Shown: piece after piece, positions 1,572 to 49,486 of the stretch
How positions within the stretch are numbered: the first letter of the stretch is position 1
How the letters are laid out: each line of letters begins with the position of its first letter
Virus record (IMG/VR): IMGVR_UViG_3300031957_002643
Location: 186,001 to 250,000 of that record
Direction: 5' to 3' (one strand)
DNA length: 64,000 bases
Position numbers and translations under genes: made by a program
The notes under the pieces: generated by a model
Told to the model about the DNA's origin: nothing
The model's input: the letters and a program-made list of their open reading frames with translations, nothing else
The model's database searches: none

Positions 1572-1579
1572 GATAAATA
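1572..1579 (+). promoter_or_regulatory. T4-late-like promoter GATAAATA
   Basis: TAAATA core 6 nt before ATG 1586; the same core recurs before many structural genes. Confidence 0.5.
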
Positions 1580-1585
1580 TACATC

Positions 1586-1987
1586 ATGAGCAACCGATTT
1601 ATTTCATTAGAGCAGAAGTTCAAAGCTGCCGCACAGTATGTGAAATCATTACATGCTGATCGTCAGGTCGATATTGATTCAAATGGCGAACCTGTTGTTA
1701 TTGGCATTGAAGAGATAGCTGATCAGCCAAATCTAATTCGCGTATTCATTAAGCGAAACAACAAAAAAGAAAATTTTGTCATCAGTAAGCGTGCTCGTAA
1801 GGCAGAGCCGATCAAGAAATCATTTGATTCTGATGATGGGTTTCGTAGAAGCGATTCCCGCCCTGTTGAAAAGAAAAAAGAGCCAGCGACTAATGAAGAA
1901 AAGTCTAATGGTGAAAGAAGTTACCGCGTGAGTAATAGTGAAGACTATGAAGAGTTGATCCGCACATTAATGAGGAATAACGACTAA
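1586..1987 (+). CDS. Hypothetical protein, basic and charged
   Basis: 133-aa ORF, coupled to the next gene by TAATG. Confidence 0.7.
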   Translation: MSNRFISLEQKFKAAAQYVKSLHADRQVDIDSNGEPVVIGIEEIADQPNLIRVFIKRNNKKENFVISKRARKAEPIKKSFDSDDGFRRSDSRPVEKKKEPATNEEKSNGERSYRVSNSEDYEELIRTLMRNND

Positions 1988-12454: not shown

Positions 12455-13033
12455 ATGGCTGACATAAAAATTTCTGCATTACCATTGGCAACTTCTACAA
12501 ATGGAAGTGACGTAGTTCCTATTGTTCAAGGCGGTGCAACAAAGAAAGTACAGATTGATGATCTGATCAATCCGGTTACAGGTTGGGCTAATTATGCAGA
12601 TACACAATACACATCAGGAAGTCCTTTTCTTTTAGCGGCGGATACCGATACTGTCCTACCTAACAATGCTGGATCGGTTCTGGATACCCAAAAACCAGAT
12701 GATGTAACCACCTTTTATGATGGGTCTGTGATTACGGGAAGAAATGGTGATGGTATCTGTATTACCGTCGATATGGAGGTTATCCCGACTTCTGCCGGTA
12801 CCACTCTTTTGGAAGTTTGGTTTGATATCGGTGGCGCGGTTGGTGAGCTATATCGTCGTCCAATTTCATTCCCAAAAGGACAAGGCGTAGTCAGGCATGT
12901 TAATTTCACAGTGACCGGATACACCCTTGATACATGGGAAGCAAACGGTGCAAGTGTCTATGTTAGGGCAAATGGTACTGCAAGTATATATGGTGTTCGA
13001 TATGTCGTTACAAGAACACACAAAGCTAGGTAA
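12455..13033 (+). CDS. Tail fibre/appendage-type structural protein
   Basis: N-terminal MADIKISALP..T.....DVVPIVQGGATKK motif typical of phage fibre/appendage proteins. Confidence 0.6.
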   Translation: MADIKISALPLATSTNGSDVVPIVQGGATKKVQIDDLINPVTGWANYADTQYTSGSPFLLAADTDTVLPNNAGSVLDTQKPDDVTTFYDGSVITGRNGDGICITVDMEVIPTSAGTTLLEVWFDIGGAVGELYRRPISFPKGQGVVRHVNFTVTGYTLDTWEANGASVYVRANGTASIYGVRYVVTRTHKAR

Positions 13034-13041
13034 ATACTGAT

Positions 13042-13626
13042 ATGAAGTTTTCTGAAGATTTGAATCTAACAATTGAAGGCCATGTGCTGATCACATCTTA
13101 TTCGGATGAGAATGGTTCTGACCCTGTAATTTTGCTCAATAAGCGTAATGCTGTGCATAAAGAAAACATGAGCTTAGCAATTGCTAGATCATTATCTGGA
13201 AGTGATTCGGGACACGTTTATTCTATGCACTTCGGTACCGGTGGTGCGACTGTAGATGAGGTGGGTGCTATTTCCTACTCAGACCCTAACGTTAGTGGTT
13301 CTGCTGACCTGAACGTCCCTTCTTACTCTGAAATTGTTGATGCTACTCGTGGTGCCCCATCTGGAAACCAAACCGGCGTTAGGCACGTCAACGGAACTGT
13401 GTTTTCTGATGTTGAAATTCGGTGTGTTCTCGATAAAGGAGAACCAATTGGTCAAGCAGCATTCGATAATTTATCCGCAAACATTAACGGAACATATGTG
13501 TTCGATGAAATTGCGTTAAAAACTGATGACAACCTTCTACTAACGCATATTGTCTTCAATCCTATTGAAAAAACGGCCAATCGCGTCATCGAAGTTGTGT
13601 ATACATTACGAATTAGATTGGTCTAA
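13042..13626 (+). CDS. Baseplate/fibre-attachment structural protein
   Basis: KRNAVH.ENMS, FDEIAL and THIVFNPIEKTANR...YTLRI motifs typical of baseplate proteins; GGTAAATA 5 nt upstream. Confidence 0.65.
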   Translation: MKFSEDLNLTIEGHVLITSYSDENGSDPVILLNKRNAVHKENMSLAIARSLSGSDSGHVYSMHFGTGGATVDEVGAISYSDPNVSGSADLNVPSYSEIVDATRGAPSGNQTGVRHVNGTVFSDVEIRCVLDKGEPIGQAAFDNLSANINGTYVFDEIALKTDDNLLLTHIVFNPIEKTANRVIEVVYTLRIRLV

Positions 13627-23367: not shown

Positions 23368-23634
23368 ATGTCAAAATCAACAATTAACAATAGTTTGTAT
23401 GATGGTTTAACACCCTCGGAAGCTTTGAGAAAGTTGAATAGAAGATATATTAGAAAAGAAGAGTGTAAAGATATGCTTGATAAAGTGGCTGAGTATATCG
23501 AAGAATTGGAATCTCGTTCTATCGGAAATGATACTGATCACAAGATTGATCGTCTTACTAAAACGATTACTTCTGTATCTTCCCAACTGGAAGATATCGA
23601 ACTTACCTTAGAAAATCTTCAAGAAGCAAGCTAA
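23368..23634 (+). CDS. Hypothetical coiled-coil protein
   Basis: SD GGAG before ATG 23368 (alternative start 23347). Confidence 0.6.
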   Translation: MSKSTINNSLYDGLTPSEALRKLNRRYIRKEECKDMLDKVAEYIEELESRSIGNDTDHKIDRLTKTITSVSSQLEDIELTLENLQEAS

Positions 23635-23668
23635 TATTCCTATTACTGATTTGACATATTGTTAAATA

Positions 23669-23750
23669 AATTTGTGAGCAGAAAAGTCGTAAACCTCTAT
23701 CGCGGCAAAAAACAATCCTTCACCTCTCCCCTGAAGGACGCTCACAAAAT
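23669..23750 (+). ncRNA. Candidate structured RNA (three-way junction) upstream of phoH
   Basis: TTTGTGAGC/GCTCACAAA closing stem with two inner hairpins whose loops both contain CCTCT. Confidence 0.5.
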
Positions 23751-23778
23751 TGACTCTCAGAAAATAAGGAAATCCGAT

Positions 23779-24453
23779 ATGTCAAAGAAAAAAGCCGCTC
23801 GTGCTTTGCGCGAGGACACGTCGCTATGCGTCATTACCCCAAGAACCCGCAGTCAGAAGAAATTCATGGACTCAATTAATGAGAACAAGATCACATTCGG
23901 TACAGGCTCAGCAGGTTCAGGTAAAACATATATTGCGGCGATGATGGCGGCGGATGCATTACAACGCGGGTTGTGTCGCAAGATTATTGTCTGCCGACCA
24001 ATTATTGAAGCTGGTGGTGAAAAGCTTGGTTTCCTTCCGGGCGATCTGGAAGAAAAGTGTGAGCCATACTTGAAGCCGCTCTTTGATGTGTTTGAATTAT
24101 ATTGGTATAAATCAAACGGTCACTTTAGGAATTTGATGAACAGTGGTCGAATTGAAATCTGCCCACTTGCTTACATGCGTGGGCGTAACTTTGAAGACGT
24201 GTGGATTCTATGTGACGAAGCACAGAACATGAACGCCAATATGATGAAAATGCTTCTAACTCGTATCTCTACGGGTTCAAAGCTCATCATTACAGGTGAC
24301 CCAAGGCAACGTGACCGCGCAGATGCCGATGGCTTTGAGATGGCAACGAACAGGTTGGACGATTGTCCAGAAATCGGGTTCGTGAAATTCCATCACGAAG
24401 ACGTACAGCGAGAAGAAGTCGTTAAAAACATTCTTGATCGCTGGGAAGATTAA
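23779..24453 (+). CDS. phoH: PhoH family ATPase
   Basis: GSAGSGKT, RP.IEAG.EKLGFLPGDL.EK, LAYMRGR, DEAQN and GDPRQ; SD AAGGA before 23779. Confidence 0.93.
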   Translation: MSKKKAARALREDTSLCVITPRTRSQKKFMDSINENKITFGTGSAGSGKTYIAAMMAADALQRGLCRKIIVCRPIIEAGGEKLGFLPGDLEEKCEPYLKPLFDVFELYWYKSNGHFRNLMNSGRIEICPLAYMRGRNFEDVWILCDEAQNMNANMMKMLLTRISTGSKLIITGDPRQRDRADADGFEMATNRLDDCPEIGFVKFHHEDVQREEVVKNILDRWED

Positions 24454-24459
24454 GAGATT

Positions 24460-24491
24460 ATGGGCCGGGTGTTTCTCATCCGGCCCATTTT
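24460..24491 (+). terminator. Rho-independent terminator
   Basis: ATGGGCCGGGTG-TTTCT-CATCCGGCCCAT followed by TTT, directly after phoH. Confidence 0.8.
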
Positions 24492-24493
24492 AC

Positions 24494-24501
24494 TATAAAT
24501 A
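24494..24501 (+). promoter_or_regulatory. T4-late-type promoter TATAAATA
   Basis: Exact T4 late consensus right after a terminator, 5 nt before ATG 24507. Confidence 0.7.
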
Positions 24502-24506
24502 TCTTC

Positions 24507-25022
24507 ATGGAAGATTTTGATATACTAATCGAAGCACTTACTAATGGTGCTCCTGAAGATGAAGTAACCGATATTCTCAATGAGAATAAATTCGATGAAG
24601 AGCATCGGGAGACCCAAAGTTATTACCTGCTTCTATTTGAACAATACATAGATGAGTGTTCTGCATACTCCTTTAAAGGATGGGATGACCTCAAAGTCTA
24701 TGGTGAACCAAAAATTGAAAAATTCTGGTTTGAAGTTAAGCTGTTAGCGCCTGACAATATTGATTACGAGAGCGGTATTAAGCGCATCCTTGGTCAGTAT
24801 AAACAAAACAAAGCAGTAATGAAGACCATTAACAATGGTTCTAAAATAATAAAAATAAGAATTCTTCGGTCCATTCTTGATGAACTCGAAGACAGAAATA
24901 GAAAACTCGCTAGAAAAGAAGCCGAAGATCAAGGTTATGCACCGCAGGAGGAGCCACCACAGGACAATCAACAGGGTGGTGATGAATTTGGTGGTGATGA
25001 ATTTGGTCAGGAAAGTTTCTAA
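24507..25022 (+). CDS. Hypothetical acidic protein
   Basis: 171-aa ORF. Confidence 0.7.
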   Translation: MEDFDILIEALTNGAPEDEVTDILNENKFDEEHRETQSYYLLLFEQYIDECSAYSFKGWDDLKVYGEPKIEKFWFEVKLLAPDNIDYESGIKRILGQYKQNKAVMKTINNGSKIIKIRILRSILDELEDRNRKLARKEAEDQGYAPQEEPPQDNQQGGDEFGGDEFGQESF

Positions 25023-46777: not shown

Positions 46778-46854
<77 letters not shown>

Positions 46855-49455: not shown

Positions 49456-49486
49456 AGTAATATTCCTTTATGGAATATTACTTATA
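49456..49486 (-). promoter_or_regulatory. Late promoter TATAAGTA inside an 11-bp hairpin masking the endolysin RBS
   Basis: AGTAATATTCC-ATAAA-GGAATATTACT-ATG on the minus strand. Confidence 0.7.

What the first reader, a model, noticed from the sequence alone, without database searches (positions are those of the whole stretch)
23661..23778. Three-way-junction RNA with twin CCUCU loops upstream of phoH
Seen: a ~110-nt stretch after GTTAAATA (23661-23668) can fold into P1 TTTGTGAGC(23671-79)/GCTCACAAA(23740-48). It also forms a weak P2 GTCGT/GCGGC with loop AAACCTCTATC and P3 TCCTTCA/TGAAGGA with loop CCTCTCCCC. Both loops expose CCTCT, complementary to AGAGG/GGAG-like SD sequences. Known: alphaproteobacterial AbcR and cuckoo sRNAs present CU-rich anti-SD loops, and some PhoH-family proteins are RNA-dependent ATPases. 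Inference: an undescribed cis-regulatory leader or a processed trans-acting sRNA.
Basis: partly seen in the sequence, partly recalled or inferred. Interest (0 to 1): 0.65.

Follow-up and report, generated by a model that had tools for sequence, protein, structure and literature searches.

The report
Structured 5' leader of phage phoH mRNA
The stretch in front of phoH in this marine jumbo phage folds into a conserved RNA whose first bases pair with a downstream segment right at the predicted transcript start, probably to protect or control the mRNA, while the "anti-ribosome-site loops" that drew attention are not conserved.

Summary
The described fold is there. P1, P2, P3 and both CCTCT loops sit at the stated coordinates, and the minimum-energy fold reproduces the junction (z -2.75). 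Relatives confirm an RNA structure. P1 (GUGAGC/GCUCAC) is kept in 10 clade leaders through compensatory and G.U-only changes, and each sequence has its own two inner hairpins. The CCUCU loops are not conserved, no terminator follows P1, and no Rfam family matches, so the anti-SD sRNA analogy fails.

The preceding GTTAAATA is a T4-type late promoter (core TAAATA at -11..-6). It places +1 on G23674, the first base of P1. In 118 more distant phage phoH loci, 84% have a helix starting exactly there, against 34% at control TAAATA sites.

Best reading: a phoH-specific, cis-acting 5'-terminal structured leader that most likely protects the 5' end, enlarged here to a three-way junction. The conserved SD and ATG 23779 stay unpaired.

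Complication: from GTG 23674 the leader is an open frame, in phase with phoH, in all 8 close relatives (chance about 1e-6). The neighbouring gene is clearly leaderless (TATAAATA-N5-ATG). A leaderless long PhoH isoform therefore cannot be excluded.

The parts
23632..23641 (+). Conserved TAATATTCCT block. Its TAA is the stop codon of the upstream 95-aa ORF. TATTCC lies 21 nt upstream of TTAAATA in 7 of the 8 close relatives and 22 nt in L008. Possibly the -10-like part of an earlier promoter or a factor site.
   Evidence: Anchored alignment of 13 leaders; upstream regions. Function not tested.
23649..23653 (+). Semi-conserved ATTTG at -25..-21 relative to G23674.
   Evidence: consensus line. Function unknown.
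23661..23668 (+). GTTAAATA, a T4-type late-promoter-like element with core TAAATA at 23663-68 (-11..-6).
   Evidence: TTAARTA is invariant in 13 leaders. TAAATA is present upstream of phoH in 131 of 132 distant loci. The T4 late consensus TATAAATA spans -13..-6 and Aeh1 uses CTAAATA from -12 (PMC1524935). A canonical TATAAATA-N5-ATG precedes the next, virion-protein gene.
23674..23679 (+). P1 5' strand GUGAGC. G23674 is the predicted transcription start, and GUG 23674-76 is also the conserved in-frame start codon candidate. TTT 23671-73 extends the helix in this phage only.
23686..23706 (+). P2 hairpin: GUCGU / GCGGC, 11-nt loop containing CCUCU. It is weak (two G.U pairs).
   Evidence: A hairpin at this place is predicted in most relatives, but with its own sequence and register. 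67% of cells pair on the model-fitted alignment.
23716..23738 (+). P3 hairpin: UCCUUCA / UGAAGGA, 9-nt loop CCUCUCCCC.
   Evidence: A hairpin directly before the P1 3' strand occurs in all 8 close relatives with unrelated sequences. All 5 modelled pairs show double changes.
23740..23745 (+). P1 3' strand GCUCAC (AAA 23746-48 extends it in this phage only).
   Evidence: Compensatory changes: L008 GUGAGA/UCUCAC and L015 GUGAAC/GUUCGC. One-sided changes are all G.U on the + strand. L462 and L463 turn G.U pairs into Watson-Crick pairs.
23749..23765 (+). Unpaired A-rich linker between P1 and the ribosome-binding site.
   Evidence: Minimum-energy folds.
23766..23781 (+). Shine-Dalgarno AAGGA (23766-70) and the phoH start ATG (23779-81). 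Both are unpaired in the predicted fold.
   Evidence: An SD plus start codon is conserved in all relatives.
23674..23778 (+). Candidate 35-codon N-terminal extension (VSRKVVNLYRGKKQSFTSPLKDAHKIDSQKIRKSD), in frame with phoH and overlapping the whole RNA structure.
   Evidence: Open and in phase in 8 relatives; lengths are all multiples of 3. Three-base periodicity. Weak amino-acid constraint. Predicted disordered.
23779..24453 (+). phoH coding sequence (224 aa, PhoH-like ATPase).
   Evidence: PF02562; PHROG 170, E = 2e-68.
24460..24488 (+). Intrinsic terminator hairpin that ends the phoH transcription unit.
   Evidence: Hairpins with different sequences sit at the same place in 8 relatives.

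Best explanation
Bases 23674-23748 are the structured 5' end of a monocistronic phoH mRNA. GTTAAATA (23661-68) is a T4-type late promoter whose spacing puts the transcription start on G23674. The first six transcribed bases (GUGAGC) pair with GCUCAC 66 nt downstream (P1), and this helix encloses two variable hairpins (P2, P3). The result is a three-way junction whose closing helix is flush with the 5' end. The A-rich linker, the SD (AAGGA) and ATG 23779 stay single-stranded, so PhoH is translated from the SD-led start, and the transcript ends at the hairpin at 24460-88. The family-wide, phoH-specific feature is the 5'-flush helix. Its most likely role is to hide the 5' terminus from 5'-end-dependent decay (RppH/RNase E-type or RNase J-type), that is, to act as a 5' mRNA stabiliser. 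In this clade it has grown into a junction. Shown here: the fold, its conservation and covariation, the promoter motif and its spacing, and the specificity to phoH. Inferred: the transcription start, and stabilisation as the function. The leader's conserved in-frame GUG ORF suggests that some leaderless initiation also occurs (see the first rival).
For: The fold is reproduced with z = -2.75. The model R1 hits the window only once. In 10 clade leaders with PhoH 51-86% identical, the P1 core is paired in essentially every sequence. There are two compensatory double changes, and every one-sided change is G.U on the + strand. On the model-fitted alignment 79% of cells pair, against 35-47% when partners are slid. 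13 of 19 pairs show double changes against 4-7 when slid, and 0 of 500 shuffles reach the observed values. Each of 7 of 8 close relatives, folded alone, gives P1 plus two hairpins. Near-identical variants L462 and L463 carry 9 leader changes; the 3 that fall in helices all convert G.U to Watson-Crick pairs and none breaks a pair. TTAARTA-N5-G is invariant. In 118 distinct distant phoH loci, 84% have a helix of 5 bp or more starting exactly at N5+1, against 34% at 274 other TAAATA sites. For 7 bp the figures are 31% and 8%. +1 is G in 97 of 118 against 26 of 274. The helix sequences differ widely (GUGGA, GAGUG, GUGAA, GUAAG, AUGGG and others), each with a matching partner. Extension upstream of +1 decays as chance predicts. 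The T4 late promoter occupies -13..-6 (PMC1524935). TATAAATA-N5 precedes the start codon of the neighbouring virion-protein gene and lies 2 nt before a tRNA. The terminator is conserved.
Against: There are no RNA data: no RNA run holds this DNA, so the transcription start is only predicted. RNAalifold on a plain alignment recovers P1 alone. Support for P2 and P3 comes from single-sequence folds and from an alignment fitted to the model. A generic stabiliser does not explain three things: why the helix is specific to phoH, why GUGAG is so conserved within the clade, or why the leader stays an open, in-phase reading frame. In this window the helix extends 3 bp upstream of the predicted start. 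Stabilisation itself is untested.
Confidence: 0.55

Rival explanations
1. The leader is coding. The late transcript is leaderless, GUG 23674 at +1 is a start codon, and the 105 nt encode a 35-residue basic, disordered N-terminal extension (long PhoH, 259 aa). ATG 23779 gives the short form. P1, which sequesters the GUG, would set the long/short ratio. This is not exclusive with the best explanation.
For: Frame 0 from the GTG has no stop in any of 10 clade leaders, while the other frames average 2-3. Dinucleotide shuffles give P(no stop) of 0.04-0.33 each, a product of about 1e-6 for the 8 in-phase sequences. Leader lengths are 102, 105, 108 or 114 nt, all multiples of 3. Frame 0 has the best codon score, and positions 1 and 2 are A-rich in a periodic pattern. 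Third positions differ most in distant pairs. The same phage clade clearly uses leaderless starts: TATAAATA-N5-ATG without an SD, conserved in 8 relatives, with three further cases in the window. Several public gene calls use this GTG (P0002, P0129, P0131, P0132).
Against: Relatives that keep the promoter and helix lack the frame. L014 and L015 are out of phase. L081 and L134 have stops after 8-9 codons. Across the wide family the +1 triplet is GAG in 35 loci and GUA in 24. dN/dS is 0.3-1.3 in the leader against 0.05-0.2 in the body. Leader synonymous sites are more conserved than body synonymous sites (pS 0.36 against 0.84 for window versus L005), which points to nucleotide-level constraint. 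In micro-variants 5 of 9 changes fall on position 3, against 62 of 72 in the body. The extension is predicted disordered, pLDDT about 40. The GUG is base-paired. By established knowledge, a 5'-terminal GUG is a poor leaderless start in E. coli. The SD-led ATG is conserved.
Confidence: 0.4
2. The junction is a regulatory operator or sensor specific to phoH. One option is a binding site through which PhoH, a putative RNA-dependent ATPase, autoregulates or spares its own mRNA. Another is a switch in which a CCUU arm trades its AAGG partner for the real SD.
For: The 5'-flush helix is specific to phoH promoters: 84% against 34% at other TAAATA sites. GUGAG/CUCAC is conserved in sequence, not only in pairing, across PhoH proteins that are only 37-43% identical. 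Five of the 8 close relatives contain a CCUU...AAGG hairpin (L004 has the related CUUCC/GGAAG) that mimics the gene's SD AAGGA and its complement.
Against: Junction and loop nucleotides are not conserved, and the inner part ranges from no hairpin to two. The SD is unpaired in every predicted fold. No alternative fold was found to be conserved. No binding data exist. The CCUU/AAGG pattern was seen by eye and not tested against chance.
Confidence: 0.15
3. One reading: a processed, trans-acting sRNA whose CCUCU loops pair with SD sequences of other mRNAs, as in AbcR/cuckoo RNAs.
For: Two CCUCU motifs do lie in predicted loops of the window's own sequence.
Against: The loops differ completely in every relative: AGCCCUGUUCA and GGUAUCA in L005, CCAG and AUC in L002, AAAACUUAAAA in L012. 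No terminator or U-run follows P1. No Rfam match, even at E <= 10. The element is always fused to phoH.
Confidence: 0.03
4. A DNA-level element: inverted repeats bound by a dimeric DNA-binding protein, or a cruciform, next to the promoter.
For: The P1 arms are an inverted repeat beside a conserved promoter block. Half-sites of a dimeric protein can also co-vary.
Against: All one-sided changes give G.U pairs on the + strand (C.A on the other strand) in L002, L004, L010, L011, L014 and L015. Arm spacing varies from 4 nt to about 66 nt across the family. The inner hairpins have no DNA-level rationale.
Confidence: 0.03

Closest known systems
5'-terminal stabiliser stem-loops of bacterial and phage mRNAs (the ompA 5' UTR hairpin type; named from established knowledge, not retrieved here)
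   Same: A helix at the extreme 5' end, followed by a single-stranded stretch and an accessible SD. Pairing matters more than sequence across the wide family. The element acts in cis on one gene.
   Different: Here it is tied to one gene (phoH) across more than 100 phage lineages and sits at a fixed distance from a T4-type late promoter. In this clade it is enlarged to a three-way junction that overlaps an in-phase ORF. A stabilising effect has not been measured.
T4 genes e, soc, 49 and I-TevI: transcript-specific RNA structures combined with late promoters (PMC3014915)
   Same: A T4-type late promoter and a conserved leader helix act together in the 5' region of a phage gene. Longer read-through transcripts and late transcripts would differ at the 5' end.
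   Different: In T4 the late promoter lies inside the 5' arm, so late transcripts lack the helix that hides the SD/AUG. Here the promoter lies upstream of both arms, the late transcript keeps the whole structure, and the SD is not paired.
Leaderless mRNAs (for example lambda cI from PRM; from established knowledge)
   Same: A start codon at +1 with no SD. This pattern is conserved for the neighbouring gene (TATAAATA-N5-ATG) and formally present at phoH (TTAAATA-N5-GTG, in frame).
   Different: The phoH +1 codon is GUG, is base-paired in P1, and is followed 105 nt later by a conserved SD-led ATG. Distant relatives have non-start triplets at +1.
AbcR / cuckoo CU-rich anti-SD sRNAs
   Same: Only that CU-rich loops appear in this one sequence.
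   Different: The loops are not conserved, there is no own terminator, no Rfam match, and the element is always part of the phoH mRNA leader.

Membership tests
AbcR/cuckoo-type anti-SD sRNA | CU-rich anti-SD loops conserved among homologues | tested here: not met
   Loops in 9 relatives are unrelated to CCUCU.
AbcR/cuckoo-type anti-SD sRNA | Independent transcript with its own terminator; match to a curated model | tested here: not met
   No terminator after P1. No Rfam hit at the gathering score or at E <= 10.
5'-terminal mRNA stabiliser stem-loop | Helix begins at, or within a few nt of, the transcript's 5' end | tested here: inconclusive
   The helix starts exactly at the start predicted from the TAAATA-N5 spacing in 84% of 118 loci, against 34% of controls. 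The 5' end itself is not mapped; no RNA runs hold this DNA.
5'-terminal mRNA stabiliser stem-loop | Lengthens mRNA half-life in cis | not testable with these tools
   Needs decay measurements with P1 mutants.
T4-type late promoter | TATAAATA-like motif at -13..-6, with variation tolerated at -13/-12 | tested here: met
   GTTAAATA with the TAAATA core is invariant. Consensus positions from PMC1524935. Canonical TATAAATA lies upstream of the adjacent virion-protein gene and a tRNA.
T4-type late promoter | Recognition by a gp55-like sigma with gp33 and gp45 | not tested
   Only a gp44-like clamp loader and a gp31-like co-chaperonin were identified near the locus. The rest of the 335-kb contig was not examined.
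Leaderless mRNA / N-terminal extension of PhoH | Start codon at +1 that opens a conserved frame in phase with the gene | tested here: inconclusive
   Met in 8 close relatives. Not met in L014, L015, L037, L081, L134 or in the wide family. Amino-acid constraint is weak.
Riboswitch | Conserved ligand-pocket nucleotides in junctions or loops, plus an expression platform | tested here: not met
   Junctions are merely A-rich and loops vary. The interior ranges from 0 to 2 hairpins. The SD is never sequestered in predicted folds.
T4 e/soc/49/I-TevI-type RBS sequestration | SD or AUG inside the helix, and the late promoter within the 5' arm | tested here: not met
   The SD and ATG are unpaired. The promoter lies upstream of both arms.

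The most novel reading that the evidence does not exclude
The element is a dual-purpose 5' module specific to phage phoH. A late promoter starts the mRNA on a GUG that is both the first base pair of a three-way junction and a leaderless start codon. Opening or closing of P1 would then decide between a long, basic-tailed PhoH and the short SD-led PhoH. Alternatively, the flush helix is the mark by which PhoH, an RNA-dependent ATPase of unknown role, recognises or spares its own message. Either reading would give the first functional handle on a gene used for years as a marine-virus marker without a known function.
Probability: 0.2. Interest if true: 0.8.

Novelty: new member of a known kind. 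Interest (0 to 1): 0.55.

Why it matters
phoH is one of the most widespread "auxiliary" genes of marine phages and a standard diversity marker, yet its role and regulation are unknown. This work defines a conserved control region: late promoter, 5'-flush helix, then SD. It is found in more than 100 distinct phage lineages and is absent from Rfam 15. That gives a concrete, testable regulatory element, and it indicates late, monocistronic expression. It also exposes conserved leaderless late genes in a T4-like jumbo phage clade, and a rare case in which a covarying RNA structure and a conserved open frame occupy the same 105 nt.

Tried and rejected
- Rfam at the gathering score on the window and on 20 related loci, and at E <= 10 on 23500-23900: only chance-level hits.
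- blastn of the locus against isolated phages: no match. tblastn finds only PhoH proteins below 50% identity.
- The metagenome-contig scan added no new close relatives.
- A scan for TTAAATA-N5-GTGAGCA returned mostly chance hits and had to be filtered by tblastn.
- RNA evidence: no RNA run holds the locus.
- GTTAAATA and TGTGAGCA are not enriched in the window. TAATATTCCT is mildly enriched, but its other copies have different contexts.
- RNAalifold on a plain MAFFT alignment recovers only P1, because the inner hairpins are not in column register.
- Contigs carrying identical proteins had identical leaders and gave no micro-variation. Only L462 and L463 helped.
- AlphaFold of the long isoform: the extension is disordered, which does not discriminate between readings.
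- A crude gene call for promoter-motif enrichment was too greedy to be useful.
- Literature searches found no paper describing a phoH leader, or one pairing TATAAATA with leaderless mRNAs.
- In one search the script chose a wrong P1 partner for the window and L011; those two rows were disregarded.

Full report
**1. What is at the coordinates**

The window is part of a 335-kb IMG/VR contig from seawater, a T4-like jumbo phage.
- Around the finding lie a gp31-like co-chaperonin, a gp44-like clamp loader and two small ORFs. Then come phoH, two virion structural protein genes, a spanin and a prohead protease.
- The upstream 95-aa ORF stops at 23634.
- phoH (224 aa, PF02562) starts at ATG 23779, behind AAGGA 23766-70, and stops at 24453. 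A terminator hairpin follows at 24460-88.
- The minimum-energy fold of 23661-23778 is that three-way junction: -23.6 kcal/mol, z = -2.75.
- The 9+9 inverted repeat is unique in the window and absent from 100 shuffles.
- No Rfam family matches.

**2. Relatives**

No isolated phage is similar at the DNA level. Protein-guided searches recovered the same locus in other metagenomic phages, with synteny clamp loader / small ORF / leader / phoH / 167-aa gene / 191-aa gene.
- The distinct leaders are L005, L002, L010 (with the near-identical L462 and L463), L011, L012, L008, L004, L014 and L015. Their PhoH proteins are 86% down to 51% identical to the window's.
- All carry [G/C/T/A]TTAA[A/G]TA, then 5 nt, then GTGA, and all have an SD plus start codon 92-114 nt further on.

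**3. The RNA structure is real**

- P1: GUGAGC pairs with GCUCAC about 66 nt downstream in every clade member.
- L008 has GUGAGA/UCUCAC and L015 has GUGAAC/GUUCGC. Both are true compensatory changes.
- All one-sided changes (L002, L004, L010, L011, L014, L015) give G.U on the + strand. This argues for RNA of this strand and against a DNA-level repeat.
- Folded alone, 7 of 8 close relatives give P1 plus two hairpins in the same places, although the hairpin sequences are unrelated.
- On an alignment fitted to a covariance model of P1/P2/P3, 79% of cells pair, against 35-47% with slid partners. 13 of 19 pairs show double changes, against 4-7 when slid. No shuffle out of 500 reaches the observed values.
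- Caveat: that alignment leans towards the model. RNAalifold on a plain alignment finds only P1, because the inner hairpins are out of register.
- Micro-evolution agrees with the structure. L462 and L463 differ from L010 at 9 leader positions. The 3 that fall in helices all turn G.U into Watson-Crick pairs, and none breaks a pair.

**4. What is not conserved**

- The CCUCU loops occur only in the window.
- They are not complementary to the gene's own SD, and P1 is followed by A-rich sequence rather than a terminator.
- The anti-SD sRNA reading therefore lacks support.

**5. The motif in front is a late promoter, and the helix starts at its +1**

- The T4 late consensus TATAAATA occupies -13..-6, and Aeh1 uses CTAAATA from -12 (PMC1524935). 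With TAAATA at 23663-68, +1 falls on G23674, the first base of P1.
- The same phage has canonical TATAAATA-N5-ATG, without an SD, before the next gene (24494-24509), which encodes a virion structural protein. The spacing is identical in all 8 relatives.
- Further TAAATA-N5-ATG cases lie at 13031 and 58237(-).
- A TATAAATA also lies so that its N5+1 position is 2 nt before the tRNA at 46854.
- TAAATA therefore behaves as a promoter with this spacing, and this clade uses leaderless late mRNAs.

**6. The element is much wider than the clade**

- A pattern scan plus tblastn found the same motif upstream of PhoH proteins only 37-43% identical (L037, L081, L134).
- Their relatives gave 160 loci, 132 of them distinct. 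131 of the 132 have TAAATA upstream of phoH.
- Of 118 distinct leaders, 84% have a helix of 5 bp or more that starts exactly at N5+1, against 34% at 274 other TAAATA sites in the same loci. For 6 bp the figures are 51% and 17%; for 7 bp, 31% and 8%.
- +1 is G in 97 of 118, against 26 of 274.
- The 5' strands differ (GUGGA, GAGUG, GUGAG, GUGAA, GAGUA, GUAGA, GUAAG, AUGGG, AUGAA and others), each with its matching partner. Pairing beyond +1 on the upstream side decays as chance predicts.
- In most lineages the leader is a simple hairpin followed about 10-20 nt later by the SD. The median distance from +1 to the SD is 32 nt.
- L134 is the minimal form, GUUGUGAG-CAGU-CUCACAAC.
- The window's clade inserted two hairpins into that loop. 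The defining, phoH-specific feature is therefore a helix flush with the predicted 5' end.

**7. The coding complication**

Evidence for translation from GTG 23674:
- From GTG 23674 the leader is open and in phase with phoH in all 8 close relatives. Lengths are 102, 105, 108 or 114 nt.
- The other two frames carry 1-8 stops each.
- Dinucleotide shuffles give a joint chance of about 1e-6 for the open frame.
- Frame 0 scores best with the phage's codon usage and shows three-base periodicity.
- Together with the leaderless neighbour gene, this makes a leaderless long isoform (259 aa) plausible.

Evidence against it as the reason the element exists:
- L014 and L015 keep the helix but are out of phase.
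- L081 and L134 have stops after 8-9 codons.
- The wide family often has GAG or GUA at +1.
- dN/dS is 0.3-1.3, against 0.05-0.2 in the body.
- Leader synonymous sites are more conserved than body synonymous sites, the signature of nucleotide-level constraint.
- The peptide is predicted disordered.
- The GUG is paired, and the SD-led ATG is conserved.

I conclude that the RNA structure is the primary, ancestral constraint. In this subclade the frame is additionally kept open, most simply because some ribosomes do start at the 5' GUG.

**8. Mechanism**

Most likely (0.55): a cis-acting 5'-terminal structure on a monocistronic late phoH mRNA (23674 to about 24490) that shields the 5' end from end-dependent decay and leaves the ribosome-binding site free.

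This role follows from established knowledge of 5'-terminal stem-loops and is not tested here. Its weakness is that it does not explain why the element is specific to phoH. For that reason I keep a gene-specific operator or autoregulation reading at 0.15 and the long-isoform reading at 0.4 (non-exclusive). The trans-sRNA and DNA-repeat readings are near 0.03 each.

**9. Comparison and novelty**

- It works like a 5' stabiliser hairpin.
- It resembles the T4 e/soc/49/I-TevI arrangement in combining a late promoter with a leader helix (PMC3014915). It fails that family's defining features: the SD is not sequestered, and the promoter lies outside the helix.
- It is not a riboswitch by conservation criteria, and it is not an AbcR-like sRNA.
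- It is absent from Rfam 15, and I found no paper describing it.
- I rate it a new member of a known kind (a cis-acting structured 5' leader), with an unusual overlap of structure and open frame.

Noticed in passing
window 24494-24509 (+); also L005, L002, L010, L011, L012, L008, L004 downstream of phoH: TATAAATA, exactly 5 nt, then the ATG of the next gene (171 aa, virion structural protein), with no SD. The spacing is identical in all 8 relatives. This implies conserved leaderless late mRNAs in a T4-like jumbo phage clade.
   Followed up: partly
window 13031-13044 (+), 58237-58224 (-), 1574-1588 (+): Further TAAATA-N5-ATG (N6 at 1574) arrangements opening ORFs of 194, 123 and 133 aa without an SD. 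These are more candidate leaderless genes.
   Followed up: no
window 46869-46781 (-): TATAAATA lies so that its N5+1 position is 2 nt before the 5' end of the only tRNA gene in the window (46854-46781). This is consistent with the promoter spacing used for phoH.
   Followed up: no
window 49457-49481: Perfect palindrome GTAATATTCC-TTTAT-GGAATATTAC in a divergent intergenic region. It shares TAATATTCC with the conserved block just upstream of the phoH promoter (23632-41). Possibly a factor binding site or a promoter element.
   Followed up: no
window 23632-23668 and the same region of 7 relatives: Fixed-spacing block TATTCC-N8-ATTTG-N8-TTAAATA (22 nt instead of 21 in L008). More distant loci have TAATAT/TATAAT-like and ATAAACAC-GTTAAAT-like motifs further upstream. 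This suggests tandem early/middle and late promoters for phoH.
   Followed up: partly
window 24460-24488 and relatives: The terminator hairpin after phoH is kept in all 8 relatives with different stem sequences (covarying). This makes phoH a monocistronic late unit.
   Followed up: partly
L308, L311, L315, L316, L318, L375, L413, L420, L427, L430, L442 (leader about 517-600): In the GUGGAC lineage the 5' strand has two possible partners, a near CCCAC and a far (GA)UCCAC. An SD-led upstream ATG opens an in-phase extension (M-x-D-P-P-x-I-K-E-x-V) whose first codons are the far partner. This may be a start-site switch.
   Followed up: no
L309, L312, L421, L429, L433 (leader): GUGAAC-AUACUGU-U-GUUCGC...ACAGUAU: the loop of the 5' hairpin is complementary to the segment after it, so an H-type pseudoknot is possible.
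   Followed up: no
window 57845-57815 (-): TAAATA-N5-GTGAGGTA, with a small hairpin UACCU-GUG-AGGUA spanning the predicted start and an ATG 13 nt downstream. It resembles the phoH start sequence, but the GAGG there probably serves as the SD.
   Followed up: no
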